Counted from the stretch's first letter, positions 1 to 39,215 are shown. The stretch is 64,000 nucleotides of DNA from Guillardia theta CCMP2712 (GCF_000315625.1 NW_005434552.1:50127-114126); one strand, 5' to 3'. Notes: generated by a model not told the origin, from the sequence alone. Numbers and translations are program-made.

Positions 1-240
1 GGGTAGGGGGTGGTACGAGGAGGGGAGAGGAGGGAGGAGGGGTGGTCCAAAAAAGAAAAGCTAATCCTACCAGCGGCTACGGGGGAAGTGTAAAACTAAA
101 AAGAAGAAGAATAAGTCTTGTTGCTGCCTTTTGTGTGCGATGGTACCTTCCGGGTATGTGTTGTTGCTGCCTTCTGTGCATTTGGTACTGATGGTCTGAG
201 GCGGGTGGCTCCGTTCTACTAGAGAGGACCAAGGGGATCA
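1..240. repeat. Dispersed repeat X (G-rich head GGGGGTGGTACGAGGAGGGG...CTAATCCTACCAG); second copy at ~27948-28190
   Basis: Near-identical sequence at 27948-28190; the head alone recurs at 6165-6225 and 34064-34085. Confidence 0.9.
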
Positions 241-311
241 AGGGGCTGGGCATACAGAGCTGCAGGATCTTAAGGATAGGTTGCAATCATTTCAAGATAT
301 CTGATCAAGAA

Positions 312-788
312 ATGACAACGTGGATGTCTGATGTGGAAAAAACGGCAATGAATCCTTTGATTGTGAAGTTCAACAGGATCAATCTTGAGAACTCTTGCTT
401 GAGTGATGTCAAGGACATCATCTTTGATAGGTACATGGAGTTATGCAAGTCAGAGATCGAGGAATTCAACAATGCCAACTTTATGTGCGAGATGTGCTGC
501 TCTTGGACACCTTCTGAAGAGTGCAATAGATTGTCTGCCTGCAAGACCTGCACAGATAATTATTTTGTATGGAGATGCTCTACATGTGATGATGTGTTTG
601 AGCACCTCGACGCGATGGAAACCGCAGTATGTCGCGATGGACGCTTGATAAAGGAGCGACACTGCAAGAGATGTGAAGAGGAGCTCGAGTTGTCATGCTG
701 GGATTGTGGAATGGTATACAAACTGTGCAATGGATATGATGAGGAATATTGCTCATATGGCTGCAAGTCTAGAAACGCATGGTTGTAG
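312..788 (+). CDS. Cys-rich hypothetical protein with multiple CxxC pairs (possible Zn-binding)
   Basis: 158-aa intronless ATG ORF with CEMC, CKTC, CSTC, CKRC, CWDC motifs; lower GC than the neighbouring genes. Confidence 0.55.
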   Translation: MTTWMSDVEKTAMNPLIVKFNRINLENSCLSDVKDIIFDRYMELCKSEIEEFNNANFMCEMCCSWTPSEECNRLSACKTCTDNYFVWRCSTCDDVFEHLDAMETAVCRDGRLIKERHCKRCEEELELSCWDCGMVYKLCNGYDEEYCSYGCKSRNAWL

Positions 789-1018
789 TCAACGAGAACC
801 CAGACAGGGGTACATCTTACTGACTGTGCAGCCTCATATGGTTGCTCATATGGTTGCTCATATGGTTGCTTATCTGGTTGCATGTCTGGAGACGATTGGA
901 GAGATTAAACAACAAGGATCCAGGGGGTATATTTTACTAACTGTGCACCCTGAATACAAGCTTATTGCTTGATCAATGTTTGGATATTCATTCTTACAAG
1001 TCTCTAGTAAACTCCTCA

Positions 1019-1190
1019 GAATCTAGCCTTCTTTTCTTGTGGCTACATTGTTCATCTTCACAATCTAGCCTTCTTCTCTTGTGGCGACATTGTTCATCTT
1101 CACAATCTAGCCTTCTTCTCCTGTGGCGACATTGTTCATCTTCACAACAATCTAGCCTTCTTCTCTTGTGGCTACATTGTTCATCTTGTG
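1019..1190. repeat. ~39-bp tandem repeat (AATCTAGCCTTCTTCTCTTGTGGCTACATTGTTCATCTT), ~4 copies
   Basis: Seen directly; a 25-bp triplication follows at ~1400-1478. Confidence 0.85.
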
Positions 1191-1354
1191 TCTGGCAGCC
1201 CTTACAGTTACAACTTCCTGCATTGGCTCCTCACCCTGTTGTGCTCACATATTTCACCTGCTTCCCCTCTCCTCTCCTCTCGTGCAAGATCTTCTTCTCT
1301 CCGGTCAGATCTGCTCCTCGCAGTCTCTTGCTTTCCTTCTTTCCGTCTCTTTCC

Positions 1355-2300
1355 TTCTCTTCATTCTCTCTGTGATACCTTTATCCCTTTCTCACCCTCT
1401 CTTAAAACATCCTATCTTGTAAACATCTTAAACATCCTATCTTGTAAACATCTTAAACATCCTATCTTGTAAACATCTCTCATTGTCTACTGCTTGTTCA
1501 TCTTTCCTGTTGATCACCCTCTCTCTCTCTCCCTTCCCTTGTCTTTCTCTCTTCTCTCGTTGCTCTCTCTTTGCTTCTTCCTGTCGAGCTGCTTCTCTTC
1601 CAGGCTCAGCTGTCAGCAGAGAGAGAAAGACGAGACGGGGGAAGAGGGAGAAGAGGAGAGGGACGAGACAAGTGAAGAACAGAAGAGCGTACCGTCAGAG
1701 GAAGCGCAGGGGACGCAAGGGAGAGGAGAGGGGATAAAAGAAAAGAGAGCGAAGGAGAGGAGACGAGGAGAGAGGAGGCGAGAGCTTCTCCTCTTGCAAA
1801 GGAGGTAAGGATGGAACAGGAGAGGACAGCAGAGTAGAAAGGCGATCAGAGAAGCAAAGGGAAGGGAAGAGGAGAGGAGAGAGGAGGGGAGCAGAAGAGA
1901 CGAGCAGAGCAGGGAGGAACAGAGAGCAGAGAGCGGAGGAGAGGAATGAACAGGAGGGAGGTAGTGGAGTGCAATGACAAGGGGAGCGGACAAGGGAGAG
2001 GACGAGTAAAGAGAGATGGAGGAGCAAGGAGAAGGGGGAAGAGAAAGAGCAGAATCACGACCAGCAGCCAAGATGCAGAAAGAGGGAAAGAGAGAGTGAA
2101 GGATAAGACGTAAGGTATGTATGAGGAGACAGACGCGAGCGGCCACAAGAGCAGAAGAAAACGCAGAAGAGAAGAAGAAATGTTTGCAACATAGACAAAA
2201 GAGAGGCAGAGGGAGACAAGCTGTCACATTGTGAAGAAGGATGATGACAAGGGAGACAGGAGCGAATGGGAAGCTCTCGGCATATGATGGGATGAGAGGC
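1355..2300. repeat. CT-rich/GA-rich foldback-like dispersed repeat; paralog at ~21386-22211
   Basis: 1355-2022 matches 21640-22211 directly; 2041-2300 matches 21386-21640 as reverse complement. Confidence 0.8.
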
Positions 2301-2899
2301 TGAGACGAGACAACAAGGGATGAGCAAGGGAAGCAGAGAGGTCTGAGATTGAGTGAGACAACCTTGCAGTCACTCTTGTCTCGTCTCTTCTTCTCCTTCT
2401 CTCTCCTCTCCTCTCCTCTTCACTCCTCCCCGTCCCTTCCCCATGGCAGCCCCCTTGTCACTGGACCCTACCCCCTCGGTATCTTTCTACCCCCTCACCC
2501 CCTCCCCCTTGCGACATCACCATGAGACTCTACAGACAGACTACCGGGTCCTGGCCCATCACTCTCACGACCACCTACCCCTCTCGTCCCTCTCCTTCAT
2601 GTACCCTCTACCCCCCTCCCATCAAGAGAGGTCAATCTTTTCTTTATTCGAGCAATACACCCTCACACTGAGTACCCTCCGAGTGACCGGGCCTGCGGCC
2701 CCGAGGCCCCGGGGCCCCGGCCCGGTGCTTCAGCTACTCCCGTCCCGGGCCCGAGGAGGGACTCCGGTGAGTAGAGGAAGAGAGCTGCGGGGCTGTACAA
2801 GACATGTGCTATCCGAGTCATACGGCAGTAGATGCCTCACTAGTGCAAGCACAAGCGATGAGAGGCCTAGACCAGTCTCCTCGCATGTCTCCCTAGTCA

Positions 2900-5441
2900 C
2901 TAGTAGATCCTGCACATGCTCGTCCCGCTCGAGCGACACATCGGGCATGACCTAGACGTCGCTGCCTCCTTGCAGTCCTCGCACAGACACTTGTGACCGC
3001 AGGGGATCAGCGCCCATTCAGCTCTTCGATCCATGCAGACGACGCATGGCTGCCCGCGCTCTCCGACGGCATCATCGTATCGCTGCTGAAGCTTCTTCCG
3101 CAGCTCGCTGAAGCTCGGCCGCTCCTTGATCTTCTCCCGCCAGCACTCTCGCATGATCGCATACACTGCTGGAGGGCATGCAGCAGGAGCCGCTAGTCGC
3201 TCCCCGTCCACAACCTTGGGTCCTACAAGCTCATCGTCGGTGATGGCCCAGTAAGGGACTTTGCCGTAAGTCCAGACCTCCCACAGCGTCACCCCGAACG
3301 CCCACACGTCGCTCTTCTCCGAGTAGCGATGTCTCAGCAAGCTCTCCGGCGCCATCCATCGCGCCCGTCCAGCCCTCGAGCCTGCCGAGCTCTCGCTCCC
3401 TACCCGACTCACTCCGTCACCGCGCGAGCCCATGATCCATCGCCCGTAGTCGGCTACCTTGACCCTCACCCCGAGGTGATCCTGCCCTTGCAGACTCCAG
3501 ACAAGCACGCTCCTCGCCGCCAGCTCCCGGTGTACAACCTCGTGCAGCGACAGCTGCTCCATCCCGTCGCAGATCTGCCTCGCCACCTCCAGCTGCACCA
3601 GCTCACCCATCGTCTCCTCCTCCTCCGCGAAGCTGCGCAAGGTCCTCTCGAGAGAGCCCTGGCAAGCGTAATCAGTCACCAGGCAGTAGTCGCCAGAGCT
3701 TGGCTCGACGGTGACGGCGAGGAGGCCAAGCAGGCTGCGGTGACGGCCCAGCTGGTGCCAGGTCTTGACCTCCTGCTCGAGAGCTTGTCTCCTGACAGTA
3801 GCTCCGCTGCCTCGGATACGTAGGATGGCCACATCAGCGGTGCTGGCGTGCGGCTGCCGCCAGCGAGCCTTGTAGACGAGCTTGGAGGAGCCTGAGCCGA
3901 CCTGACGACTGTCGACCAGGCTGTCGTAGTTCACCGATGGAACGCTTCCCAGCTGGAGACGAGAGGATCACATCAGTCATCGACCCTCATACAGACACAA
4001 ACAGGACCTGAGAGACAGCGCCCTGCTGGTTGTCGTCGTCAGACGCCTGCTGCTCCGCGTCTCTCTGCTGGCGCTGGTGCTGGCGCTTGCGCTTCTTCGT
4101 CTTGTCGCTTCTACACCTCTCATGTCGCTCGATCCCCTCCTGCGCGGGCTTGACGCTGCGTTGCAGTGCCGCTGACAGAAGCTCTCCGCTCCATAGCCGC
4201 CGCATCCAGCCCTCTATCTTGCTCGCCAGCTCCTCGTCCTGCCTCGCTCGCGCTGCCTCCGCCGCTGTTCGTCCCAGCGAGTCTCGCAGCTCCCCGAGCT
4301 CTCCGCCCCCGACCTCCAGCAGCCTCTCACAGACAGACCAGACGCCTCGCGCCGCCGCCACGTGCAGCGCCGAGCCATCAACCATCCTCATGTGAGTCTT
4401 GAGAGACACGCTGGATACGCTACGACTATGACCTCTGAGGCAGGCTTTCTCCTCCATGCTCTCAAGGTCCCACACTCTCAACGTCGCATCGCTACTCCCG
4501 CTGACGGCCGTCTTGCCGTCCTCGCTGATCGCCACGCTCTCTACCGCACTACTATGACCCTGAAGACAAGCCTTCTCCGTCATGCTCCCAAGGTCCCACA
4601 CCCTCAGCGTCGTATCGGCACTCCCGCTGACAGCCGTCTTGCCGTCCCCGCTGATCACCACGCTGTATACCGCATCAATATGACATCTAAGACAAGCCTT
4701 CTGCTTCATGCTCCCAAGGTCCCACACCCTCAAAGTCCAATCCCTACTCCCGCTGACAGCCGTCTTGCCGTCCCCGCTGATTGCAACGCTCCATACCTGA
4801 TCTTGATGACCTCCAAGACAAGCCTTCTGCGTCATGCTCCCAAGGTCCCACACCCTCAGCGTCTTGTCCCAGCTACCACTGACAGCCGTCTTGCCGTCCC
4901 CGCTGATCGCCACGCTCCTTACCAAGTCACTTTGACCCTTACGACAAGCCTTCTGCTTCATGCTCCCAAGGTCCCACACCCTCAGCGTCTTATCGTCACT
5001 CCCGCTGACAGCCGTCTTGCCGTCCCCGCTGATCACAACGCTGTATACCCAGTCACTATGACCTCCAAGACAAGCCTTCGGCGTCATGCTCCCAAGGTCC
5101 CACATCCTCAGCGTCTTGTCCCTACTCCCGCTGACAGCCGTCTTGCCGTCCCCGCTGATCGCCACGCTCTCTACCGCATCACTATGACCCTTGAGACAAG
5201 CCTTCTGCTTCATGCTGTCAACGTCCCACACCCTCAATGTCTTATCGTCACTCCCGCTGACTATGGTCGTGACTCTCGCTGGTCCTACTGGATGCTTCTG
5301 CTTCAGTCGCTCTGCTCCTGCACTCACGGCCAGCACTCTCACTTCCCCCTCATCTCCTCTCTCGATCGCTTCGATCAGCTGCAGCCGCTTCCTCTCGTCC
5401 TCCTCCATCCTCTCCCGCTCGTCGTCGGAGACCAGGCTCAT
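2900..5441 (-). CDS. Ankyrin-WD40(7)-ankyrin - tyrosine-kinase-like (pseudo)kinase - C3HC4 RING protein, copy 1; exons 5441-4008 and 3952-2900
   Basis: A 55-nt phase-0 GT..AG intron (4007-3953) joins ...AVSQ to LGSVPSVNYD in frame. WD repeats GH..V.SVAISGDGKTAVSGS.D.TLRVWD; ankyrin GSALHVAAARG...DSLGRTA; kinase HRELAARS, DYG, WMAPE, SDVWAFGVTLWE; RING CVVC..CGH.CLC..C..CPMCR. Confidence 0.85.
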
Positions 5442-6312
5442 CCTCCTCCTCGCTCGTCCTGCAGCCCCAGCACAAGGACCTCTTGTCTTCCCTCGCTCCT
5501 CTCGAGCAGACCGTCTGCCGTCCTCGTCGTCCTCGTCGTGCTTGAGGTCCGTAGGGAGGAGTAAGAGAGAGCGAGAGGCCTGTAGCAGGGATGAGCAGCG
5601 GGACCTCTCAGGCTTGTCTGACAGCCTTGAGCCTCTCACACGTCTATCTCTTGTATATGTCTAGTATGTCTAGTAGGCATCGCTTGTCTGTATGTGATGT
5701 CTTGTGCTTGAAGGCTGTCGACGTCGTCTTCTTGAACATGTGCGTTTGTTGTCGTCTCGTCATCAGTCTTTCTTCTTGTCTCTCTCTATCTGCTCTGTCG
5801 TGTCTCTCCGTCTCTCTTCCTTGTCTATGTGTCCGTCTCTCTTGTCCATCGAGAAGACATGTGAAGCAACCCTGCCCTACCTCCCCTCCCTTCATCTTTC
5901 CCTCTTTCCCTTCTCCCTCCCTCCTTCCTCCTTCCTCTCCTTCCCTTCCCTTCGCTTGTCTCTTTCTATCGCTTCTCTCTCCTTGTCTCTCCCTCACACC
6001 ACCTGACCTCTCCCTTCCCTCTCCCTTCCCTTCTCTTTCCCTCCCCTCGATCCTCTCCTCTTCCTCTGCTTATCCTACCGAGCTCTGTCAGGACCCCTCC
6101 TTTATCCCTCCCTCCCACCCCTACCCCACTCCCTTACCCCCAGTCCCCCCACCCACCCGATCCAGGGGGTGGTACGAGGAGGGGAGAGAAGGTAAGGGGG
6201 GTGGTCCAACTAATCCTACCAGAGAGGCTCAGGGGGGAGGGAGGGGTGGAGGAGGAAGGGGCGGGAGGGGGTGGTGGGGTGGGGTCGAGAGTTCAACCCT
6301 CTTTCTCATTGT

Positions 6313-8510: not shown

Positions 8511-11500
8511 CTACTCGATACCTAAACTTGTAAGATACTCCTGAACTGACATGTCCCAAGCATAAGCAGCGCATGTCTTGCCGTCATTGTCTTTCTCCCT
8601 CAGCAGCCCCTCCCCGCACCTCTCCGCCAAGTACCGCATAACCTCCAAGTGCCCTCCAGCACTCGCCGAGTGCGCGCATGTCTGGCCATCAATTTTCTTC
8701 TCGCTCAGCAGCCCCTCCCCGCACCTCTCCGCCAAGTACCGCATAACCTCCAAGTGCCCTCCAGCACTCGCCAAGTGCGCGCATGTCCAGCCGCCAATTT
8801 TCTTCTCCCTCAGCAGCCCCTCCCCGCACCTCTCCGCCAAGTACCGCAAGACCTCCACATGCCCTGCCTTGCTCGCCGCATGCGCGCATGTCGTGCCGGC
8901 TTTGGTCTTCTCGCTAAGCAGCCCCTCCCCGCACCTCTCCGCCAAGTACCGCACGACCGCCAAGTGCCCTCCCTCACTAGCCAAGTGCGCGCATGTCTGG
9001 CCGCCCAAGTCCTTCTCGCTCAGCAGCCCCTCCCCGCACCTCTCCGCCAAGTACCGCAGCACCTCTAAGTGCCCTCCAGCACTCGCCAAGTGCGCGCATT
9101 TCTGACCGCCCAAGTCCTTCTCGCTCAGCGGCCCCTCCCCAAACCTCTCCGCCAAGTACCGCAGCACCTCCAAGTGCCCGCCCTCACTCGCCCAGTGCGC
9201 GCATGTCCTGCCATAATTGTCCTTCTGCCTCAGCAGCTCCTCCCCGCACCTCTCCGCCAAGTACCGCACTACCTCCACATGCCCTCTCACACTCGCCAAG
9301 TGCGCGCATGTCTGGCCGTCACTTTTCCACTCGCTCAGCAGCTCTACCCGACATTGCTCCTCAACAGCCTCCAGCACCTTCACATGCCCATACTCCGCCG
9401 CCCAGTGCATAAAGGTCCTGCCTCCCTCATCCTTCGTTCTTACATCTGCTCCTGCCTCGATTAGCTCCCTCACGCTTCCCGCCCTCCCCAGCATCCCCGC
9501 TACAGGCACCCCTGTCCTCCCGTCCTTCATCCGCTCGTCCATGTCGCNNNNNNNNNNNNNNNNNNNNNNNNNNNNNNNNNNNNNNNNNNNNNNNNNNNNN
9601 NNNNNNNNNNNNNNNNNNNNNNNNNNNNNNNNNNNNNNNNNNNNNNNNNNNNNNNNNNNNNNNNNNNNNNNNNNNNNNNNNNNNNNNNNNNNNNNNNNNN
9701 NNNNNNNNNNNNTGTCCATCTTGTGCCGCAACCTCGCCATCGTCTTCCAGTACACTGACTGCATCGGCTCGTCCGCAATATCTCGACATTTATGGTCTCC
9801 TTGTGTGTCTTCGATCCAGTGCCTGAGCTTGTTCATCGCCATCTCCTTCACGCGGTTCGACACCTCGATCGCCTCCTTGTAGTTTGACTCGTCGTTGTAC
9901 CACTCCGCCTCCCTCCCCCTGCTCGCCTCCACCAGCCCCCAGCACTCCTCCACGATCGATTGAACAAGACCCTGATGATACTTGTACGATGAGTCCCATG
10001 GCGCTGTTCTCAGCCGCTCCTGGATCCTCCCCTCCTCCCCTCTCAGGTCTCGCTCTACCTCCCTCGCCAGGTTCTCCATCAGCCCTACGTACAGCTGCTT
10101 CCTCTTCCCCACAAAGTCCTCGATCGNNNNNNNNNNNNNNNNNNNNNNNNNNNNNNNNNNNNNNNNNNNNNNNNNNNNNNNNNNNNNNNNNNNNNNNNNN
10201 NNNNNNNNNNNNNNNNNNNNNNNNNNNNNNNNNNNNNNNNNNNNNNNNNNNNNNNNNNNNNNNNNNNNNNNNNNNNNNNNNNNNNNNNNNNNNNNNNNNN
10301 NNNNNNNNNNNNNNNNNNNNNNNNNNNNNNNNNNNNNNNNNNNNNNNNNNNNNNNNNNNNNNNNNNNNNNNNNNNNNNNNNNNNNNNNNNNNNNNNNNNN
10401 NCCTCCGGACACCCCGAGCTTGTCCTCGTTGAGGAAGCTCTCCGGCAGCCTCATCCCCTTCAGCCCCCTCCACACCCGCAGCCCCTCCGGCAGAGGCGTG
10501 TGACGAGACAGCTTCACGATGCCGCTGACGATGCAGTGGATGGTCGTCGTGTACTTGTTGGGGACCTTGTTGGAGTCTTGGAGGAGCTCTTTGGGAGCTC
10601 GAAGAACAGAGTTGTACTTGAAGTACATCGGCCCTGTCATAGCAAGCCTCTTGTCAGCTATCTCACGCTCTCTTGCTCCTCTCTCCTCCCCCATGCTCCT
10701 TCTCCCTCTCTCTCGCTATCTCTCTCACTTACCTGTGTAGAGCTGCAGCGCGATCAGCTCCGCCTCCTGTAGCCCTGCCTTGATCGCCGTGTCCAGCCCC
10801 TTCAGCTCCTCCATCCCTCGGATCACCCGCGTCCCGTCCGACAGCCTCCGCCTCCTCTCCGGGTCTGTCACGTTGAGCCACTCCTCCTTGGCTGTCGTCG
10901 TGATCCCGTAGTTGCTCGTCGTGAACGCTTCCTCCGCGTCCTTGCCCTTGCAGTGCTCCTCCTCTATCGCCTTCATCAGCTCCGTCTGAGGTAGCCCGAT
11001 CCGCTCCATCAGCCCACCGTAGTACTCCTCGATCTTCCCGTACACGGCCTCGCGTACCTCCCCGCTGCCTGTACCGTCCGACTCATTCACCGCAAACTTG
11101 CTGTTGTGCGACGTCGCACCGTCTCCTCCCGCCCGCCCTCCTGCCTCCGCCGGCCTCCTCAGCGCCTCCTCGAGCCTCCTCGCTATCGCCGTCTGCCATA
11201 GAGCCGATAGAGCGCTCTCCGTCATCCCCTGTAGCCCCGCAAGAGGACTCGCCGCGCTCCCGCCGGGGATGCACTCCGCCATGACTCGGAGGATGTTGAG
11301 GTCGCCGAGGCTGCTGGTCTTGCGCTCGAGCTCCCACTCTCTTGCCACTCTGACCTCGTAGTCGTCGTACGAGAGCTTGTCAGGGCCTGCGTGCGGCATG
11401 AGGGCCGACGCGTCGACGCCGAGAGCCATGCGGAGGTTGTTGAGAATCGTTTTGTAATCCTCGGAGTCTAGGGAAGTCTGAAAAAGCTTCTTGAGGTCAG

Positions 11501-11796
11501 AGCTGATGTCGTCGGGGATAGTCCAGCTGGTCGTCTGCTGGGCACTAGCTGGTGGATCAGCCGTGGGATGGTTGATTTGAGATTTGATCTCGATGTCGGT
11601 CTTGTTTGACGGCGGAGTCGTAGGGCTGGAGATGCTTGACGGGATGGTCTCTACGTCTGCTTGAGGGGCTGGGGGATCTTTGACAGTCTGCTTTCTCAGC
11701 TCGGCCTCGAGCTCTGAGATCCTTCTTGTCGCTTCTTCCAACCTCTGCTGGAGTAGCGAGTCATCACGACCCTCCTCGGGCTTCACTTTGGACGAG
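8511..11796 (-). CDS. R-S-E-type mono-ADP-ribosyltransferase - helical linker - ankyrin repeat protein, copy 1 (5' end and ART core in gaps); intron 10732-10634
   Basis: A 99-nt GT..AG intron restores LYTG/PMYFKYN; VWRG motif present; 35-aa ankyrin repeats G.TCAH.AS.GGHLEV.RYLAE; close paralog of 17715-20461. Confidence 0.8.
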
Positions 11797-22950: not shown

Positions 22951-25045
22951 CAAGAGAGTATAAGTCCTTCAACGTCTTCGTTTTTCTCTCTTCCCTCTCC
23001 TCTCCTCCCTCCCGGCATGAAATGTTCAACCCAACCGGCAGGGTAACTACACGGGCAAGGTAAGTACACCGGCAGGGCGGTGACCGGCCCGGGCGCGGCC
23101 CGGGCCCCGGGAACTCCCATCCCGGCACTGGCCCGGCCGTGGGCGGGGCCTGAGACTCAGACTCTGTTTCATCGTGTTCGGTCCGTACTGTCTGTACAAG
23201 ATCAATAGTCAGGATGCGACGAATGAAATCAAATCGATTCTCCGATCCCGCCCAAGCCTCTGTGATAGCGACCTCAGCCTGATCGCTACGTTCACGGCCT
23301 GAGGTGCAGCTGTGGCCGTAGGTCGAGGACCGTGTGGCCAGCAACTTGAAGCCGAGGCTGCTCGTGTCACGGTCATGCGTCTAAGAGCGCTTGGGTGTTC
23401 CCCAAGCAACATCCATGATGACTAGACGTCACTAGAGCCTCCGACGCCTCATCGCCCCCCCGTGAGCAAGACCTCTCGGTACCTCTCAGCTCCTCCAGCA
23501 CAACCCGACATGCAAGACAAGAGGCTGCTGCTGACGTGACGCCTGCGGCCCGGGATGGACGCGACCTAGCCATGGCTGACGTCCGAGCACTCGCCATCAA
23601 GGTGACGACACGCTTCAGCTCTGAGCGAGGCTGCGAGAGCAGAGCACCAGCTGGAGCACGCATGTGTCATCTGTGAGCGCTAGAGCCATCAGAGCCTTCT
23701 TGGACTCCAGCTGCCATCAAGCGGCTCAAGCACCACGAGGACTGTAGAGGAGCTTGTAGACTAGCTTCACCCCTCAGCTCCTTCTCCTCTCATGCCCCTC
23801 CGTCCTCCCGCTCCCTCCCTCCCCTCCCTCCCTACCTCTCCTCACAGCACACACTCCCCTCCCCTCCTGCTGCTGTTCCTTCTCCTCTCTCCTCCATCGC
23901 TCCTGCCGCTGTAGCCTCTGCCCCTCCTACCCGTCGACCTTGTCCGTCAGAGCTCTGACAGCCTCAGCTACTCTTCATCCGCGACCTCCGTCACCGCCGA
24001 TTTCCATGTCAGCTCTCTCCCTCTCCTCGCATCTTTCTCTCCCTCATCAGACCTCCCACCAGCACCCCAGCACAAGTCCTGGCTACCTCTCCAGCTGCTG
24101 GGCACATGCCTCCATCTCGCTCCTCTTTCTCACTCCCTACCTCATGCTTGGATGGGTTGGAACCCCTCGCATGACCCCCCACCCCTCCCTCTCCGTACCC
24201 ACCCCTCTCTTCCCCTCGCGTCTGGTCAANNNNNNNNNNNNNNNNNNNNNNNNNNNNNNNNNNNNNNNNNNNNNNNNNNNNNNNNNNNNNNNNNNNNNNN
24301 NNNNNNNNNNNNNNNNNNNNNNNNNNNNNNNNNNNNNNNNNNNNNNNNNNNNNNNNNNNNNNNNNNNNNNNNNNNNNNNNNNNNNNNNNNNNNNNNNNNN
24401 NNNNNNNNNNNNNNNNNNNNNNNNNNNNNNNNNNNNNNNNNNNNNNNNNNNNNNNNNNNNNNNNNNNNNNNNNNNNNNNNNNNNNNNNNNNNNNNNNNNN
24501 NNNNNNNNNNNNNNNNNNNNNNNNNNNNNNNNNNNNNNNNNNNNNNNNNNNNNNNNNNNNNNNNNNNNNNNNNNNNNNNNNNNNNNNNNNNNNNNNNNNN
24601 NNNNNNNNNNNNNNNNNNNNNNCGGCTTGCGCCGTAGAGCAGAAGCGAGCACTAGCCCGCATAGACAGACATGGGGGTGGAGGACAAGAGGAGCTGAGAG
24701 GTAGAGAGCAAGACGCGCTTCTATCAGGTACAATCAAGGTTGACCGCAACATTGACCGACAAGNNNNNNNNNNNNNNNNNNNNNNNNNNNNNNNNNNNNN
24801 NNNNNNNNNNNNNNNNNNNNNNNNNNNNNNNNNNNNNNNNNNNNNNNNNNNNNNNNNNNNNNNNNNNNNNNNNNNNNNNNNNNNNNNNNNNNNNNNNNNN
24901 NNNNNNNNNNNNNNNNNNNNNNNNNNNNNNNNNNNNNNNNNNNNNNNNNNNNNNNNNNNNNNNNNNNNNNNNNNNNNNNNNNNNNNNNNNNNNNNNNNNN
25001 NNNNNNNNNNNNNNNNNNNNNNNNNNNNNNNNNNNNNNNNNNNNN

Positions 25046-27889
25046 TCCATCGCGCTATCCTCCAACCACCCGCTGCCCTCATGCCTTTGCATCGCCCTCG
25101 CTACCGCCTCGATCGCTCCCGCCTCCCGCGCCCGCGCCTGGCTGTCCGCCATGCCCTCCGTCATGCTGCGCAAGGCCTTGCATGCATCACACTGTAGCCA
25201 TCGTTCGTCCACATGTGTGGACATGGCGCTGACGACGGCCTCGATCGCTCCCGCCTCCCGCGCCCGCGCCTGGCTGTCAGCCATGCCCGCCGTCATGCTC
25301 TCAAGGGCTTCGCATGCTGACCACTGCAAGCACATCTCGTCTGCGTGCGTGGACATGGCGCTGACGACGGCCTCGATCGCTCCCGCCTCCCGCGCCCGCG
25401 CCTGGCTGTCCGCCATGCCCTCCGTCATGCTGCGCAAGGCCTTGCATCCATCATTTTGTAGCCATTGCTTGTCTGCGTGTCTGGACATGGCGCTGACGAC
25501 GGCCTCGAACGCTCCCGCCTGCATGGCCGGGAGCTTGTTCTGCTCGTGGCCCTTGGCTATCGCTGTCATCACCTCGCATAGACCTTGCTGTATCTTCGCG
25601 TTGCTCTGGTGCCTGGTCATGGCGCTGACGACGGCCTCGATCGCTTTCGCATCTCTCGCTGTGCCCTGGTATCGGAAGTACTGCATTGTGTACTTTAGGG
25701 CCCAGCACGCTGCCTGCTGTACTTTCAAGTCGTCCGCGTGCTTATCGAGGCATCTCATGACGGCCTCGATCGCTCCCGCCTCTCGCGCCCGCGCCTGACT
25801 CTCATCCCTGAAGCTGATAATGTAGTCCAGGGCCCAGCACGCAGCCTGCTGTACCCCCGCGTGGTCTGCATGCGTGGACATGGCGCTGACGACGGCCTCG
25901 ATCGCTCCCGCCTCCCGCGCCCGCGCCTGGCTCTCTTCGATGTGATCGACTATATGCTTCAGTGCCCAGCAAGCAGCTTGCTGTACACCCGCATAGTCTG
26001 CATGTAAGGACATGGCGCTGACGACGGCCTCGATCGCTCCCGCCTCCCGCGCCCGCGCCTGGCTCTCATCCCTGAAGCTTACAGTGTAGTTCAGGGCCTC
26101 GCACGCAGCCTGCTGTACCCCCGCATCGTCCGCGTGCGTGGACATGGCGCTGACGATGGCCTCGATCGCTCCCGCCTCCCGTGCCCGCGCCTTGCTCTCT
26201 TTGATGACACTGACGGTATGTCTCAAGGCCCAGCACGCAGCTTGCTGTACGCCAGCGTCGTCCGCGTGCGTGGACATGGCGCTGACGACGGCCTCGATCG
26301 CTCCGGCCTCTCGCCCCTTGAGCTTGTCAGCCCCCCCGTTCCGAGCCATGCTGACCAAGGCTTCGCACGCAGCCTGCTGTACCTCCGCGAGAGCCTCGTA
26401 CGTCCTCATCTCCTGCATCACTGCCTCTATGCTGTCGTCAGCTCCCGTCCTCAGCAGCCTCCATGCCTCCCTTGCCGGCTGCTCCGTCCCGCTTCCGTCT
26501 TGTGCCCCTACCGCTGCTGACGCCCCGACCGGCAGCGCCTGAGCTCCCGTCCTCAGCGAGCTGAGAGCGTCGCTGCCCGTGGACTCCAAGGCGGTGCAAG
26601 CTGACTCTTGCAGCTCCACGAGCTCTGCGTACTTGCGCTTCCTGACTCTCCTCGCCACCGCCTCGATCCCTCCCCCCGCTGCCTCTCCGATCCTTCTCCA
26701 TGCAGCTTCTGCCATGCTGCGTATGCCTCGGGCATAGCGACTGGGTTGCCGGCCCCTGCCTGCTGCTGTCCAGGCGTCCTGTCTGACCATGTCCATGCAG
26801 CAGCCCCCTCATCCCCCTCCGCTCCGGCTCTTCCCACAGCTACCGCAAGCTCGGCGAACCTCGGGCGGTCCTCCTCCCTCGTCGCCCCAGCAGCTCTCCA
26901 GCAGGGCCCACAACCCGTCCGGGGCATCCTCCGAGGAGGTGCTCTCGAGGCAGCCTCCCAGCCCCGCACACGTACCCGATCACAGTCGGGTCCGTCATGG
27001 GGTAGTAGGGGGTCATGCCCGAGGTCAGGATCTCCCAGCACGTGACCCCGTAGGCCCACACGTCGCTCTTCTCCGAGCACCGGCCTCTCTGCATCGACTC
27101 TGGGGGCATGTACCGCACCGGCAGCCCTCGCCCCGCTACCCTCCCGTCACTCCCGTCCACCAGCTCCCCTGCCCGCCCGTACCCCGCCACCTTCACCGAC
27201 GTCCTCCCCACGTCCTCCTTGTCGAAGCCCATGACCAGCACGTGCCGAGCCGCGAGGTCCCGGTGCACGACCCGCTGCTCAGCCAGGTGCTCCATGCCCT
27301 GCGCGATCTGCTCCATCATCGCCGTCTGGTGCCCTCTCGTCACCTGTCCCGCCAGCCTCCCCAGCATAGCCTCTCTCAGCGACCCCAGCTCGGCGAGCTC
27401 GGTCAGCAGCAGGGGACAGCCGTCGGCGTCGTGGCTCTGCCCCATGAAGCGTACAAGCCGAGGATGCGGCCCGAGCCTGAGCATGACCGCGGCTTGTCTG
27501 CCGCCGTCGTCTTGCCTGAGCTTGAGCACGGCTACCTTGATCTTGGCGGGCCCTGCACTCCTTCCTTGCAGGAGGAGGTGACCTATGTAGAGGGCCTGGG
27601 AGGAGCCTGCTGAGATAGGCTGCCCCTCCATCTCCACGTCGTGCCTGGGGACGAGCGACGCGTGTCGCTCCTGCCACTCCTAGATGGCGCTGCGGAGAGC
27701 GAGGTTGGGGACAAGGTGGTCGGAGGGGAGGAGGGCGCCGGTGAGGGGGCTGGAGAGACGATGGCGGAGCCAGGTCTCGATGGAGGATCTCTCGTAGGTG
27801 TGGCCATCGCAGCAGGTGACAGGGTCGGTCATGAGCGCCATGCTGATGGGGCAGATGAAGGACCGGAGCGCTCCCTGGTCCGCTGCCAT
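25046..27889 (-). pseudogene. U-box - tyrosine-kinase-like (pseudo)kinase - armadillo (44-aa) repeat gene with an in-frame stop and frameshifts; 3' end in gap
   Basis: U-box FICPIS..LMTDPV..DGHTYERSSIETW..SPLTG..LVPNLALRSAI is in the same frame as the kinase, separated by a TAG at 27680-27682; HRDLAARH, LPVRYMPPE, SDVWAYGV; ARM units REAGAIEAVVSAMSTHAD.AGVQQAAC.AL. Confidence 0.8.
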
Positions 27890-28685: not shown

Positions 28686-30215
28686 ATGAAGCATGAGCCA
28701 CGAGACGAGGGAGACTCTTTGACTCCCGAGAAAGACCTCGATGAAGCCAGCAAGGCTTTCGAGGGACGTACGGAGCGGAGCGCAAACGGCACGACAGGTA
28801 GAGGTCCGCAGTTGCCTGATCGTGAGAAACAAGACAATCAGAGTCGGTTTGCATGGAGTCATGACCGGTCACACGCAGGAAACGAGATCGAGATCGCGAG
28901 GGCATCCAAGCTAGTCGACCAGACAGCCAAAAGCTTGTCGTTGCGCAAGAGAGAGGCTGAGCTGAAGAAGGCTGAGGACACAGGAGACGAGATCAAGATC
29001 GCAGAGGCCCTCCTGAGAGTCAGGGTCGCAGAGCTGAAGGAGGCTGAGGACACAGGAGACGAGATCGAGGTCGCGAGGGCACGCAAGTTAGTCAACAAGG
29101 CATTGCTAAGCTACTTTGTGCACAAGAGAGAGGCTGAGCTGGAGGAGGCTGAGGACACAGGAGACAAGATCGAGATCCTCAAGGCACGAATCAGGGTCAG
29201 GGAGGCAGAGCTGAAGGAGGCTGAGGTCACAGGAGACGAGATCGAGATCGCAGAGGCCCTTCTTGGCCTCAGGATGGCAGAGCTGGAGAAGGTTTGGGTG
29301 AGAGGAGACCAGATAAAGTTCGAAAGGGCAGTCGAGCTAGCCAGGCAGGCAAGCATAAGCTTGTCGTTGCTCAGGAGGACGGCAGAGCTGAAGGAGATTG
29401 AGGACACAGGAGACGAGATCGAGATCGCAAAGGCGCGTTCCAGACTGACAGAAGCAGAGCTTGACGAGGCGAAGATCAAAGGAGACAAGATTAAGATTGC
29501 AGAAGCACATATCAAGTACAGGAAGACATACCTCGATATGATTCAAGTCACAGGAGACGAGATCAAGGTCGCAGACGCCCTCCTGACAGTCAGGAAGGCA
29601 GAGCTGAAGGAGGCTGAGGTCACAGGAGACGAGATCGAGATCGCGAGGGCATCCAAGCTAGTCGACCAGGCATGGCTAAGCTACTTTGTGCGCACGAGAG
29701 AGGCTGAGCTGAAGAAGGCTGAGGACACAGGAGACGAGATCAAGGTCGCAGACGCCCTCCTGACAGTCAGGAACGCAGAGCTGAAGGAGGCTGAGGACAC
29801 AGGAGACGAGATCGAGATCGCGAGGGCACGCAAGTTAGTCGACCAGGCATGGTTGCGCAAGAGAGAGGCTGAGCTGAAGAAGGCTGAGGACACAGGAGAC
29901 GAGATCAAGATCGCAGAGGCCCTCTTTAGCGTCAGGGTCGCAGAGCTGAAGGAGGCTGAGGTCACAGGAGACGAGATCGAGATCGCGAGGGCATCCAAGC
30001 TAGTCGACCAGGCATGGTTGCGCAAGAGAGAGGCTGAGCTGAAGAAGGCTGAGGACACAGGAGACGAGATCAAGATCGCAGAGGCCCTCTTTAGCGTCAG
30101 GGTCGCAGAGCTGAAGGAGGCTGAGGTCACAGGAGACGAGATCGAGATCGCGAGGGCACGCAAGTTAGTCGACAAGGCATTGCTAAGCTTGTCGTTGCAC
30201 AAGAGAGAGGCTTAG
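28686..30215 (+). CDS. Alpha-helical tandem-repeat protein, copy 2
   Basis: 509-aa ORF; shares its N-terminus, stop and 3' flank with 13428-14783. Confidence 0.6.
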   Translation: MKHEPRDEGDSLTPEKDLDEASKAFEGRTERSANGTTGRGPQLPDREKQDNQSRFAWSHDRSHAGNEIEIARASKLVDQTAKSLSLRKREAELKKAEDTGDEIKIAEALLRVRVAELKEAEDTGDEIEVARARKLVNKALLSYFVHKREAELEEAEDTGDKIEILKARIRVREAELKEAEVTGDEIEIAEALLGLRMAELEKVWVRGDQIKFERAVELARQASISLSLLRRTAELKEIEDTGDEIEIAKARSRLTEAELDEAKIKGDKIKIAEAHIKYRKTYLDMIQVTGDEIKVADALLTVRKAELKEAEVTGDEIEIARASKLVDQAWLSYFVRTREAELKKAEDTGDEIKVADALLTVRNAELKEAEDTGDEIEIARARKLVDQAWLRKREAELKKAEDTGDEIKIAEALFSVRVAELKEAEVTGDEIEIARASKLVDQAWLRKREAELKKAEDTGDEIKIAEALFSVRVAELKEAEVTGDEIEIARARKLVDKALLSLSLHKREA

Positions 30216-30813: not shown

Positions 30814-33417
30814 CTAGTAGATCCTGCACATGCTCGTCCCGCTCGAGCGACACATCGGGCATGGCCTCGACGTCGCTGCCTCCTTGCAGTCCCCGCACAG
30901 ACACTTGTGACCGCAGGGGACCAGCGCCCATTCAGCTCTTCGATCCATGCAGACGACGCATGGCTGCCCGCGCTCTCCGACGGCATCATCGTATCGCTGC
31001 TGAAGCTTCTTCCGCAGCTCGCTGAAGCTCGGCCGCTCCTCGATCTTCTCCCGCCAGCACTCTCGCATGATCGCATACACTGCTGGAGGGCATGCAGCAG
31101 GAGCCGCTAGTCGCTCCCCGTCCACAACCTTGGGTCCTACAAGCTCATCGTCGGTGATGGCCCAGTAAGGGACTTTGCCGTAAGTCCAGACCTCCCACAG
31201 CGTCACCCCGAACGCCCACACGTCGCTCTTCTCCGAGTAGCGATGTCTCAGCAAGCTCTCCGGCGCCATCCATCGCGCCCGTCCAGCCCTCGAGCCTGCC
31301 GAGCTCTCGCTCCCTACCCGACTCACTCCGTCACCGCGCCAGCCCATGATCCATCGCCCGTAGTCGGCTACCTTGACCCTCACCCCGAGGTGATCCTGCC
31401 CTTGCAGACTCCAGACAAGCACGCTCCTCGCCGCCAGCTGCCGGTGTACAACCTCGTGCAGCGACAGCTGCTCCATCCCGTCGCAGATCTGCCTCGCCAC
31501 CTCCAGCTGCACCAGCTCGCCCATCGTCTCCTCCTCCTCTGCGAAGCTGCGCAAGGTCCTCTCGAGAGAGCCCTGGCAAGCGTACTCAGTCACCAGGCAG
31601 TAGTCGCCAGAGCTTGGCTCGACGGTGACGGCGAGGAGGCCAAGCAGGCTGCGGTGACGGCGAGGAGGCCAAGCAGGCTGCGGTGACGGCCCAGCTGGTG
31701 CCAGGTCTTGACCTCCTGCTCGAGAGCTTGTCTCCTGGCAGTAGCTCCGCTGCCTCGGATACGTAGGATGGCCACGTCAGCGGTGCTGGCGTGCGGCTGC
31801 CGCCAGCGAGCCCTGTAGACGAGCTTGGAGGAGCCTGAGCCGACATGACGACTGTCGACCAGGCTGTCGTAGTCCACCGATCGTACGCTTCTCAGCTGCA
31901 GACGAGAGGATCACATCAGTCATCGACCCTCGCACAGACACAAACAGGACCTGAGAGACAGCGCCCTGCTGGTTGTCGTCGTCAGACGCCTGCTGCTCCG
32001 CGTCTCTCTGCTGGCGCTGGTGCTGGCGCTTGCGCTTCTTCGTCTTGTCGCTTCTACACCTCTCATGTCGCTCGATCCCCTCCTGCGCGGGCTTGACGCT
32101 GCCTTGCAGTGCCGCTGACAGAAGCTCCCCGCTCCATAGCTGCCGCATCCAGCCCTCTATCTTGCTCGCCAGCTCCTCGTCCTGCCTCTCTCGCGCTACC
32201 TCCGCAGCTGTTCGTCCCAGCGAGTCTCGCAGCTCCCCGAGCTCTCCGCCCCCGACCTCCAGCAGCCTCTCACAGACAGACCAGACGCCTCGCGCCGCCG
32301 CTACGTGCAGCGCCGAGCCATCGAACTCCGTGACACACTTGATAGACACGCTGGTCACCCAAGCACTATGACCTTGTAGACCACTATGAGCTCGTACACC
32401 TAAATCAAGACAAGCCTTCTGCGTCATGCTCCCAAGGTCCCACACACTCAAGGTACTCATCCCACTCCCGCTGACAGCCGTCTTGCCGTCCTCGCTGATC
32501 GCCACGCTCGTCACCCAACCACTATGACCCTCAAGACAAGCCTTCTGCGTCATGCTCCCAAGGTCCCACACCCTCATAGTGTTATCGTTACTCCCGCTGA
32601 CAGCCGTCTTGCCGTCCTTGCTGATCGCCACGATCCCTACCGCTTTACTATGACCCTCAAGACAAGCCTTCCGCGTCATGCTGACAAGGTCCCACACCCT
32701 CAAGGAGCTTGTGCAGCCGCTGACAGCCGTCTTGCCGTCCTCGCTGATCGCCACGCTCCATGCCCACTCACTGTTATCTTCAAGACGAGCCTTCTGCGTC
32801 ATGCTGACAAGGTCCCACACACTCAAGGTTCTATACCAGCTCCCGCTGACAGCCGTCTTGCCGTCCCCGCTGATCGCCACGCTGTTGATCGGACCACCAT
32901 CACCCTCAAGACAAGCCTTCTGCGTCATGCTCCCAAGGTCCCACACCCTCAACGTTTCATCGTAACTCCCGCTGACAGCCGTCTTGCCGTTCCCGCTGAT
33001 CGCCACGCTCCACGGCGTACTCCTATGACCCTGAAGACAAGCCTTCTGCGTCATGCTCCTAAGGTCCCACACCCTCAGCGTCTTATCCCAGCTCCCGCTG
33101 ACAGCCGTCCTGCCGTCCTTGCTGATCACCACGCTCGTCACCCAGTGATTATGACCCTCAAGACAAGCCTTCTCCTCCATGCTCTTGACGTCCCACACCC
33201 TCAGCGTCTTATCGTCACTCCCGCTGACTATGGTCGTGACTCTCCCTGGTCCTACTGGATGCTTCTGCTTCAGTCGCTCTGCTCCTGCACTCACGGCCAG
33301 CGCTCTCACTTGGACCTCATCTCCTCTCTCGATCGCTTCGATCAGCTGCTGCCACTTCCTCTCGTCCTCCTCCATCCTCTCCCGCTCGTGGTCGGAGACC
33401 TGGCTCATCCTCCTCAT
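30814..33417 (-). pseudogene. Ankyrin-WD40(7)-ankyrin-kinase-RING gene, copy 2; 55-nt intron 31950-31896; 29-bp duplication frameshift in the kinase
   Basis: Paralog of 2900-5441; tandem duplication of GGTGACGGCGAGGAGGCCAAGCAGGCTGC at ~31624-31690 breaks the frame. Confidence 0.8.
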
Positions 33418-38964: not shown

Positions 38965-39215
38965 AAGAGTGCTGGCAGGAGAAGAAGACGGCACGGCCGA
39001 GCTTCAGAGAGCTGCAGAAGAAGCTTCAGGAGCAGTATGATGAAGCCGTCGAAGAGCGCTGCCAGCAATGCGTCGTCTGCATGGAGCGAATAGCTGAATG
39101 GGCGCTGATCCCCTGCGGTCACAAGTGTCTGTGTGAGGACTGCAAGGAGGGAGCAACGTACAGGCAATGCCCGATGTGTCGCTCGAGCACGACAAGCATC
39201 TACAAGATCTACTAG
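38962..39215 (+). pseudogene. C-terminal fragment (kinase end + RING) of a third, more diverged kinase-RING paralog
   Basis: QECWQEKKTARPSFRELQKKL...CVVCMER.AEWALIPCGHKCLCEDC...CPMCR..IYKIY*. Confidence 0.85.

What the first reader, a model, noticed from the sequence alone, without database searches (positions are those of the whole stretch)
4170..5400. A complete 7-bladed WD40 propeller inserted into a loop of an ankyrin domain
The order is an ankyrin-like helix pair (LIEAIERGDEGEVRVL), half WD, six full WD, half WD, then ankyrin repeats (DGSALHVAAARG...DSLGRTAAE). The two halves make exactly seven blades in both paralogs, so the propeller is circularly permuted, with both ends entering the ankyrin inter-repeat loop. 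I do not know this nested architecture from characterised proteins.
Basis: partly seen in the sequence, partly recalled or inferred. Interest (0 to 1): 0.85.

Follow-up and report, generated by a model that had tools for sequence, protein, structure and literature searches.

The report
WD40 propeller nested inside ankyrin unit
A cryptophyte-alga gene family encodes proteins in which a complete seven-bladed WD40 ring very probably sits inside the loop between the first and second repeat of a short ankyrin domain, ahead of a dead kinase and a RING ubiquitin ligase. This is an unusual, apparently undescribed way of combining ordinary parts.

Summary
One exon on the minus strand (ATG 5441, exon end 4008) encodes an N-terminal helix pair, then a partial WD unit, six full WD units and a partial unit, then ankyrin-like repeats. 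A 55-nt GT..AG intron (3953-4007, seen spliced in a public contig) joins it to a TKL-type kinase domain plus a C3HC4 RING.

AlphaFold2 gives a closed propeller of 28 strands, which is 7 blades (VIA Z 47.5 to a solved 7-blade WD40). The chain enters at strand b and leaves after strand a of the same blade.

The nested reading is supported but not proven. With the propeller removed in silico, the two flanks align colinearly, with a 1-residue gap at the junction, to a contiguous Pfam-recognised 3-repeat ankyrin unit in sister genes (hhalign 98.5%, E 3.7e-15). The helix pair alone reaches 83.6%. A split-chain fold test gave weak support (0.36 against controls of 0.02 or less). I could not inspect model coordinates.

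"Circularly permuted" overstates it: this is an unusual phase of ring closure.

The genome holds at least 12 copies. The WD units are 84% identical in DNA, with hypervariable positions at sites that known WD40 structures place on the top face. The kinase lacks catalytic residues. Sister genes carry an ADP-ribosyltransferase instead.

I read it as a diversifying sensor family and a new variant of known kinds.

The parts
5301..5426 (-). N-terminal helices. A long acidic/basic helix runs into the ankyrin N-cap helix pair (model residues 6-47; the cap proper is about 5301-5387). The start codon is probably at 5441-5439.
   Evidence: AF2 helices H6-28, H31-41 and H44-47. hhalign of the cap against the N-cap of a contiguous ankyrin unit gives prob 83.6%, P 8e-6. 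There is no Pfam hit for this part alone.
5274..5294 (-). Ingoing strand of the two-stranded ribbon that leads from the ankyrin cap into strand b of blade 1.
   Evidence: DSSP strand E50-64 is 15 residues long, about twice a normal blade strand. Its pairing with E342-356 is inferred.
4401..5273 (-). Closed seven-bladed WD40 propeller. Strand order is b, c, d of blade 1, then six full blades, then strand a of blade 1. The repeats have high internal conservation.
   Evidence: Pfam WD40 E 9.6e-64 with 7 stretches. AF2 pLDDT above 90 and 28 strands. VIA Z 47.5, rmsd 1.2, 286 residues aligned to 7bid; Z 42.0 to 2ymu. Mean DNA identity between units is 84%.
4374..4400 (-). Outgoing strand of the ribbon. 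It continues strand a of blade 1 towards ankyrin repeat 2.
   Evidence: DSSP strand E342-356.
4197..4373 (-). Ankyrin repeats 2 and 3 of the split unit.
   Evidence: Local alignment to the matching repeats of the contiguous unit gives z 10-13. The only Pfam families found are Ank families, sub-threshold: Ank_2 13.7 bits at profile positions 31-67. Ank_5 scores 33.4 bits on the Hanusia homolog. The representative search found only ankyrin proteins, E 2e-5 to 9e-4.
4008..4196 (-). Vestige of a second ankyrin N-cap, then a basic K/R/Q-rich linker. The exon ends at 4008.
   Evidence: Alignment A1 places this stretch on the N-cap of unit 2 in L012 and P0075. The sequence is shown.
3953..4007 (-). 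55-nt GT..AG intron, in phase.
   Evidence: Sequence read. A contig of run X1 skips exactly 3953-4007 (ends CT..AC on the + strand), while a contig of X14 runs through it unspliced.
3089..3910 (-). TKL-type protein kinase domain lacking the canonical catalytic residues (a likely pseudokinase).
   Evidence: Pfam PK_Tyr_Ser-Thr E 4.1e-57. The beta3 lysine site reads VAIL. The catalytic loop is HRE (HRQ in the window paralog) and ends in S instead of N. DYG replaces DFG. This holds in all 9 distinct copies read.
2927..3052 (-). C3HC4 RING finger at the C-terminus.
   Evidence: Pfam zf-C3HC4_3 at 49.2 bits against a cut-off of 27.
30814..33408 (-). Paralogous gene in the same window with the same split-ankyrin/7-WD module and kinase-RING.
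   Evidence: tblastn and the ORF list. Flanks are 86-92% identical to the first copy (96.6% over the 119-aa C-flank) and the propeller 71%.

Best explanation
The gene encodes a modular protein. A closed seven-bladed WD40 propeller is embedded between the first (N-cap) and second repeat of a short three-repeat ankyrin unit. The chain leaves the ankyrin cap, enters the propeller as strand b of blade 1, goes round the ring, returns as strand a of the same blade and continues into ankyrin repeat 2. The two connecting strands form a ribbon that takes the place of the ankyrin beta-hairpin and of one A-B turn of the propeller. In known WD40 structures this puts the ankyrin unit under the bottom face and leaves the variable top face free. 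A basic linker, a catalytically degenerate TKL kinase domain and a RING finger follow.

Shown here: the domain order, the 7-blade closed fold in prediction, the homology of the flanks to an uninterrupted ankyrin unit, the intron, the multi-copy family, the hypervariable sites and the loss of kinase catalytic residues.

Inferred: the physical packing of the N-cap on repeats 2-3. Also inferred is the function: the propeller is a fast-diversifying ligand sensor whose occupancy is passed through the rigid ribbon, ankyrin unit and pseudokinase to control the RING E3 ligase. In sister genes the output would be an ADP-ribosyltransferase.
For: Pfam WD40, kinase and RING hits. AF2 model at pLDDT 87.7 with 28 strands and the two long terminal strands. 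VIA Z 47.5 to a 7-blade WD40 over model residues 58..350. hhalign of the flanks without the propeller against the contiguous ankyrin unit: 86 columns, prob 98.5%, E 3.7e-15, 1-residue gap at the junction; the cap alone reaches prob 83.6%. Pfam Ank_2 covers the contiguous unit including its cap and covers the post-propeller part only from the second repeat of the model. The split-chain ESMFold2 test scored 0.36 against a best control of 0.02. The mark was reached by 51 of 78 solved complexes and 2 of 108 mismatched pairs, but a pass at 0.60 or under is rated weak. Runs agree in at least 81% of contacts and partner pLDDT is at least 70. The module is conserved in at least 12 genomic copies and in a Hanusia phi transcript-derived protein. 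It occurs with two different effector ends: kinase-RING, and ankyrin plus Pfam ART (E 1.5e-10). Hypervariable positions are 2, 3, 4, 6, 22, 24 and 41 of the 42-residue unit. Flanks are near-identical between the window paralogs (dS 0.03-0.05) while the propeller is not (dS 0.30, dN 0.18).
Against: No coordinates were available, so helix packing was never seen directly. Flank confidence is moderate (pLDDT 63-85). In that model the loop before repeat 3 comes out as one long helix rather than a canonical ankyrin hairpin. The N helix pair has no Pfam Ank hit and its pairwise similarity to the other cap is weak for the window copy (z 0.7-1.8). A natural 2-WD variant folded poorly (pLDDT 64.5) and gave no ankyrin structural match. 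dN/dS at the hypervariable sites is 0.85, not above 1. No ligand, partner or activity is known. The sensor role rests on analogy with fungal NLR repeats (PMC4986451).
Confidence: 0.62

Rival explanations
1. Plain linear architecture. The N-terminal helices are an independent helical or coiled-coil segment, for example for dimerisation. The WD40 ring is an ordinary domain followed by two ankyrin repeats. The resemblance of the helix pair to an ankyrin cap would then be fortuitous or vestigial.
For: No Pfam Ank hit on the helix pair. Weak pairwise scores for the window copy. The complex test is only a weak pass. The poor short-variant model had no ankyrin match. The first helix is long (23 residues) and highly charged.
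Against: The colinear profile alignment runs through the junction with a 1-residue gap. The Ank_2 profile starts at its second repeat on the post-propeller part. The two ribbon strands bring both chain ends to the same point. The helix pair is conserved with the module in kinase-RING genes, ART genes and Hanusia.
Confidence: 0.28
2. The architecture is an artefact. It could be a mis-assembled repeat array or a decaying pseudogene family, so the count of exactly seven blades and the nesting carry no functional meaning.
For: Copies with 2, 5 and 6 WD units exist. Short-read contigs do not assemble the WD region. Several copies are truncated or carry stops. The raw RNA reads laid only on the 3' end and carried two fixed differences.
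Against: The window copy has an uninterrupted 478-codon frame from the ATG to a correct splice donor. The intron is seen spliced. Seven units are found in most copies, including the 58%-identical C35 copy. The same split module, with a different WD count, is found in a second genus. Non-variable propeller sites have dN/dS 0.42.
Confidence: 0.07

Closest known systems
Fungal NLR WD40 domains with high internal conservation (HET-E/HET-D/HNWD family; PMC4986451, PMC2873952)
   Same: 42-residue WD units that are nearly identical to each other. Variation is concentrated at a few positions after GH and in the B-C turn. The number of repeats varies among paralogs. The family is multi-copy with swapped effector domains. 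Fungal members of this type are among the best sequence hits.
   Different: There is no NACHT/NB-ARC module. The propeller is internal and embedded in an ankyrin unit rather than C-terminal. The effectors are pseudokinase-RING or ART. The organism is a cryptophyte.
Highly repetitive bacterial WD40 propellers and designer 7-blade WD40 (PDB 2ymu, 5yzv, 7bid)
   Same: These are the best structural matches: Z 47.5, 42.0 and 40.8 at 38% identity. Cyanobacterial WD40 proteins top the sequence search.
   Different: Those are terminal or stand-alone propellers. None is described in its entry title as lying inside another repeat domain.
Propellers nested in another domain, e.g. prolyl oligopeptidase, where the propeller lies between the N- and C-terminal parts of the hydrolase domain (my own knowledge, not tested here)
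   Same: Both chain ends of a closed propeller emerge side by side, and the host domain is built from sequence on both sides.
   Different: The host there is an alpha/beta hydrolase and the propeller is not of WD40 type. Here the host is an ankyrin solenoid and the joint is a hairpin-to-hairpin fusion.
Ankyrin domains with loop insertions, e.g. the short primate-specific insertion in the Skd3/CLPB ankyrin domain (PMC7343390)
   Same: An ankyrin repeat domain is interrupted by extra sequence.
   Different: That is a short peptide insertion, not a folded 300-residue domain.
TKL kinases joined to repeat domains (RIPK4/ANKK1, LRRK-type; PMC9573974 mentions Guillardia theta TKL/RIP-like kinases)
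   Same: Ankyrin and/or WD40 repeats combined with a TKL-type kinase domain.
   Different: The order and topology differ. The kinase here lacks the catalytic K, D and N and is followed by a RING.

Membership tests
WD40 beta-propeller | Tandem units of about 40 residues with the GH...WD signature, recognised by the Pfam WD40 model | tested here: met
   PF00400 E 9.6e-64 with 7 stretches. Several whole-propeller models pass their cut-offs, e.g. PF25173 at 325.6 bits against 154.
WD40 beta-propeller | Closed ring of four-stranded blades (here seven) | tested here: met
   The AF2 model has 28 strands and pLDDT above 90. VIA Z 47.5, rmsd 1.2 A over 286 residues to the 7-blade 7bid. This is a prediction, not an experiment.
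Ankyrin repeat domain | Repeats recognised by Pfam Ank models above the gathering score | tested here: inconclusive
   In the window protein the post-propeller part scores Ank_2 13.7 bits (cut-off 27.3) and Ank 12.3 bits. The N helix pair gives no hit. In the Hanusia homolog Ank_5 scores 33.4 bits on the same post-propeller region.
Ankyrin repeat domain | The helix pair before the propeller is homologous to an ankyrin repeat and colinear with the later repeats | tested here: met
   hhalign of flanks against the contiguous Pfam-validated unit: prob 98.5%, E 3.7e-15, 86 columns. The cap alone gives prob 83.6%, P 8e-6.
Ankyrin repeat domain | Repeats stack into one solenoid (N-cap packed on repeat 2) | tested here: inconclusive
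   The split-chain fold test scored 0.36 against controls of 0.02 or less and is rated weak. No model coordinates were available. The short-variant model was of low confidence.
Active eukaryotic protein kinase | Beta3 lysine, HRD aspartate, catalytic-loop asparagine and DFG aspartate | tested here: not met
   The sites read VAIL, HRE or HRQ, and S in place of N. Only the D of DYG is kept. This is the same in all 9 distinct copies read. The fold is a kinase, so I file it as a likely pseudokinase.
RING-type E3 ligase | C3HC4 zinc-binding pattern recognised by Pfam | tested here: met
   PF13920 at 49.2 bits against a cut-off of 27. Ligase activity was not tested.
NLR / STAND receptors with high-internal-conservation WD40 repeats | Central NACHT or NB-ARC nucleotide-binding domain | tested here: not met
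   The two exons are fully accounted for by helix pair, propeller, ankyrin, linker, kinase and RING. Only the best 25 of the 48 Pfam families hit by exon 1 were shown, and none of those is NACHT/NB-ARC. There is no room for such a domain.
NLR / STAND receptors with high-internal-conservation WD40 repeats | Internally conserved repeats with a few hypervariable positions and variable repeat number | tested here: met
   84% DNA identity between units. Entropy peaks at positions 2, 3, 4, 6, 22, 24 and 41. Paralogs have 2, 5, 6 or 7 units, though assembly collapse is not excluded.

The most novel reading that the evidence does not exclude
Cryptophytes possess a receptor family that lacks a NOD domain. 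Its sensor is a cassette-like, rapidly diversifying WD40 propeller, rigidly mounted inside an ankyrin unit. Ligand binding there switches on interchangeable effectors: a pseudokinase-RING ubiquitin ligase or an ADP-ribosyltransferase. This would be an independent invention of repeat-based non-self recognition, in a gene island that also holds variable ankyrin and ARM arrays.
Probability: 0.15. Interest if true: 0.8.

Novelty: new variant of a known kind. Interest (0 to 1): 0.5.

Why it matters
All the parts are common domains, so the interest is in how they are joined. A folded 300-residue ring is spliced into the hairpin of a repeat solenoid through a continuous two-stranded ribbon. Three full-text searches found no description of this, and nothing similar turned up in the protein searches outside Guillardia-like algae. 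If the packing is real, it is a natural example of hairpin-to-hairpin domain grafting, which is useful for protein design with DARPin and WD40 scaffolds. The wider pattern suggests an immune-like sensor repertoire in an algal lineage where none has been characterised to my knowledge. That pattern consists of near-identical repeats with hypervariable sites that known WD40 structures place on the top face, a constant scaffold, swapped effectors and many copies.

Tried and rejected
- **Pfam on the flanks alone:** nothing for the N helix pair, and nothing for the C flank when it was cut after the LH motif. Sub-threshold Ank hits appeared only once the preceding residues were included.
- **Homolog search with the whole module:** swamped by WD40 proteins. 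Only one informative hit, Hanusia phi P0075.
- **Same search restricted to the C flank:** no hit at E 0.001 or better. This says little given the length window and the word index.
- **Exhaustive representative search with the 80-residue C flank:** only 8 weak hits. The five I checked are all ankyrin proteins. No homolog with an empty loop was found outside the family.
- **Folding a natural 2-WD variant (contig C194) to expose the ankyrin part:** pLDDT 64.5. The structural search gave only partial WD40 and generic helical-repeat matches, so it was uninformative.
- **Complex prediction:** weak support only.
- **ESM Atlas features:** ankyrin clusters at 0.84, below the level that counts.
- **Kinase-RING paralogs at 50-72% identity:** no ankyrin or WD40 within about 5 kb upstream. 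So there is no 'same scaffold with an empty loop' among them.
- **Positive selection:** dN/dS at hypervariable codons is 0.85, so it is not demonstrated.
- I repeated it with sequences taken from the files.
- **Steps deliberately left out:** the spliced two-exon protein was never assembled or searched; the exons were handled separately by reference. The propeller-less concatenations used for hhalign were built inside a script from one exon and were sent to no search tool.

Full report
**Source and gene model**

The window is eukaryotic. Its assembly has 87.1 Mb in 669 contigs. The only close database relative of the module is a transcript-derived protein of the cryptophyte Hanusia phi. From memory the size fits Guillardia theta, but I did not verify the name.

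On the minus strand, ORF 3987..5639 has its first ATG at 5441. It ends functionally at 4008, where a GT..AG intron of 55 nt (3953-4007) joins it in phase to ORF 2900..3952. A contig of run X1 skips exactly those 55 bases, while a contig of run X14 reads through them. That contig has a few mismatches and may come from a paralog. Raw RNA reads covered only the 3' end.

Each exon was analysed by reference.

**Observation**

Exon 1 contains, in order:
- a helix pair;
- a partial WD unit, six full 42-residue WD units and a partial unit;
- two ankyrin-like repeats.

Pfam gives WD40 E 9.6e-64 with 7 stretches, and whole-propeller models above their cut-offs. Exon 2 is a TKL-type kinase (E 4.1e-57) plus a C3HC4 RING at 49.2 bits. 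The paralog at 30814..33417 has the same layout.

**The propeller**

AF2 was run on an alignment of 10 family members and gave pLDDT 87.7, with values above 90 in the ring. DSSP shows 28 strands: 3, then 6 x 4, then 1.

VIA-align gives Z 47.5 (rmsd 1.2 A, 286 residues, model 58..350) to the seven-bladed designer WD40 7bid, and Z 42.0 to the repetitive propeller 2ymu.

So the N-terminal partial unit supplies strands b, c and d of blade 1, and the C-terminal partial unit supplies strand a. The ring is closed across the a|b junction. In the textbook G-beta arrangement (my knowledge) the break lies between c and d. This is an unusual phase of closure rather than a rearranged fold. For that reason I call 'circularly permuted' only partly apt.

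**Is it nested in an ankyrin unit?**

Four lines of evidence point the same way.

1. *An uninterrupted counterpart exists.* Sister genes (contigs C35 and C15, and Hanusia P0075) carry a second three-repeat unit directly after the module. Pfam Ank_2 covers that unit from its first helix. I removed the propeller in a script and aligned the family's flanks to that unit with hhalign. The result was 86 colinear columns, probability 98.5%, E 3.7e-15, with a single-residue gap exactly at the junction. The helix pair alone against the other N-cap gives 83.6%, P 8e-6. Pairwise, the post-propeller repeats score z 10-13. The caps score only z 0.7-4.3.

2. *The Pfam match starts at the second repeat.* On the post-propeller part the only Pfam families that appear are Ank families. 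They are sub-threshold, and Ank_2 matches from profile position 27-31 onward, which is its second repeat.

3. *The chain ends meet.* The first and last strands of the AF2 model are 15 residues long (50-64 and 342-356), about twice a blade strand. The N helices end just before the first (H44-47, three residues earlier) and the C helices begin right after the second (H358). I infer a two-stranded ribbon that replaces the ankyrin hairpin.

4. *The separated flanks are predicted to associate.* Folded as separate chains, the helix pair and the post-propeller part scored 0.36 against a best control of 0.02. The tool rates this as weak support. The mark was reached by 51 of 78 solved complexes and 2 of 108 mismatched pairs, but passes at 0.60 or under are more often wrong than right unless the guess was likely beforehand. 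The runs agree in at least 81% of contacts and the partner's pLDDT is at least 70.

Against this:
- I had no coordinates, so packing was never seen.
- Flank pLDDT is 63-85.
- The N helix pair alone has no Pfam hit.
- A natural 2-WD variant folded poorly and gave no ankyrin match.

I put the nested topology at roughly 0.7.

**Family and evolution**

The genome holds at least 12 copies of the module. Most have 7 WD units; others have 6, 5 or 2. Those may be real, decaying or collapsed in assembly.

The 42-residue units are on average 84% identical in DNA within a gene. Variation is concentrated at positions 2, 3, 4, 6, 22, 24 and 41. These lie in the D-A loop and start of strand a, and in the B-C turn. 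In known WD40 structures those elements form the top face (my knowledge).

Between the two window copies the flanks are almost identical (dS 0.03-0.05). The propeller has dS 0.30 and dN 0.18, with dN 0.95 at the variable codons against 0.10 elsewhere. This looks like cassette exchange or repeat shuffling on a homogenised scaffold. dN/dS is not above 1, so positive selection is not shown.

The pattern matches the high-internal-conservation repeats of fungal NLRs (PMC4986451), but no nucleotide-binding domain is present here.

**Effectors**

The kinase domain lacks three catalytic residues in all 9 distinct copies read. The beta3 lysine is L. The HRD aspartate is E, or Q in the window paralog. 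The catalytic asparagine is S. It is therefore probably a pseudokinase.

The C35 and Hanusia genes carry further ankyrin repeats and an R-S-E type ADP-ribosyltransferase instead (Pfam ART E 1.5e-10). The C35 gene also has a cysteine-rich N-terminal region.

The kinase-RING cassette also occurs behind unrelated upstream regions elsewhere in the genome. None of those has an ankyrin unit, so no 'same scaffold, empty loop' version was found among them.

**Mechanism (inferred)**

The propeller's variable face binds a ligand. The ribbon and ankyrin unit hold it rigidly against the pseudokinase, which gates the RING E3. In sister genes the output would be the ADP-ribosyltransferase. Nothing here tests binding or activity.

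**Novelty**

Three full-text searches found no paper describing a propeller inside an ankyrin domain. Domain insertion as such is well known, and every component is ordinary. I therefore class this as a new variant of known kinds, of moderate interest.

Noticed in passing
window 3089-3910 (-) and 30814-31877 (-); loci L003-L010: The kinase domain of this family has lost the beta3 lysine, the HRD aspartate (E, or Q in the window paralog) and the catalytic asparagine in every copy read. It is a conserved pseudokinase in front of a RING.
   Followed up: partly
L012 (contig C35) 3642-8003 (+); P0075: The same split-ankyrin/WD40 module sits in a 1454-codon frame. Before it come ephrin-receptor-like/TNFR-like cysteine-rich repeats. 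After it come a second, uninterrupted ankyrin unit and a Pfam ART / ADPrib_exo_Tox domain. So effectors have been swapped on a constant sensor module.
   Followed up: partly
window 8511-11796 (-): An ORF with near-identical ankyrin repeats and an N-terminal part resembling the ART region of the C35 gene, interrupted by N runs.
   Followed up: no
window 24724-26796 (-): A 690-codon ORF made of highly similar ARM/HEAT-like units of about 42 residues with a few variable positions. This is another internally conserved repeat array in the same island. It is followed by a kinase-like ORF (26840-27637) that keeps HRD but has GYG in place of DFG.
   Followed up: no
window 36866-38994 (-) and 38964-39215 (+): Two arrays of near-identical 35-residue ankyrin-like units. 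On the opposite strand lies an isolated fragment matching only the last 84 residues of the kinase-RING (74% identity), probably a gene relic.
   Followed up: no
window 28686-30215 (+): A 509-codon ORF of tandem acidic coiled-coil-like units of about 35 residues with high internal conservation.
   Followed up: no
L016 (C194) 4604-5200 (-); L007/L015 (C239); L011 (C50): Copies of the module with only 2, 5 or 6 WD units but intact flanks. These are either repeat-number variation by unequal exchange or collapsed assembly.
   Followed up: partly
L021 (C234) 2322-5669 (-); L027 (C6) 2421-6287 (+); L025 (C166) 183-4103 (+): Kinase-RING paralogs at 50-70% identity lie downstream of large ORFs with other domains: kinase plus PARP catalytic domain; beta-helix plus SPRY; eight MgtE_N repeats. 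I did not establish whether these belong to the same genes.
   Followed up: partly
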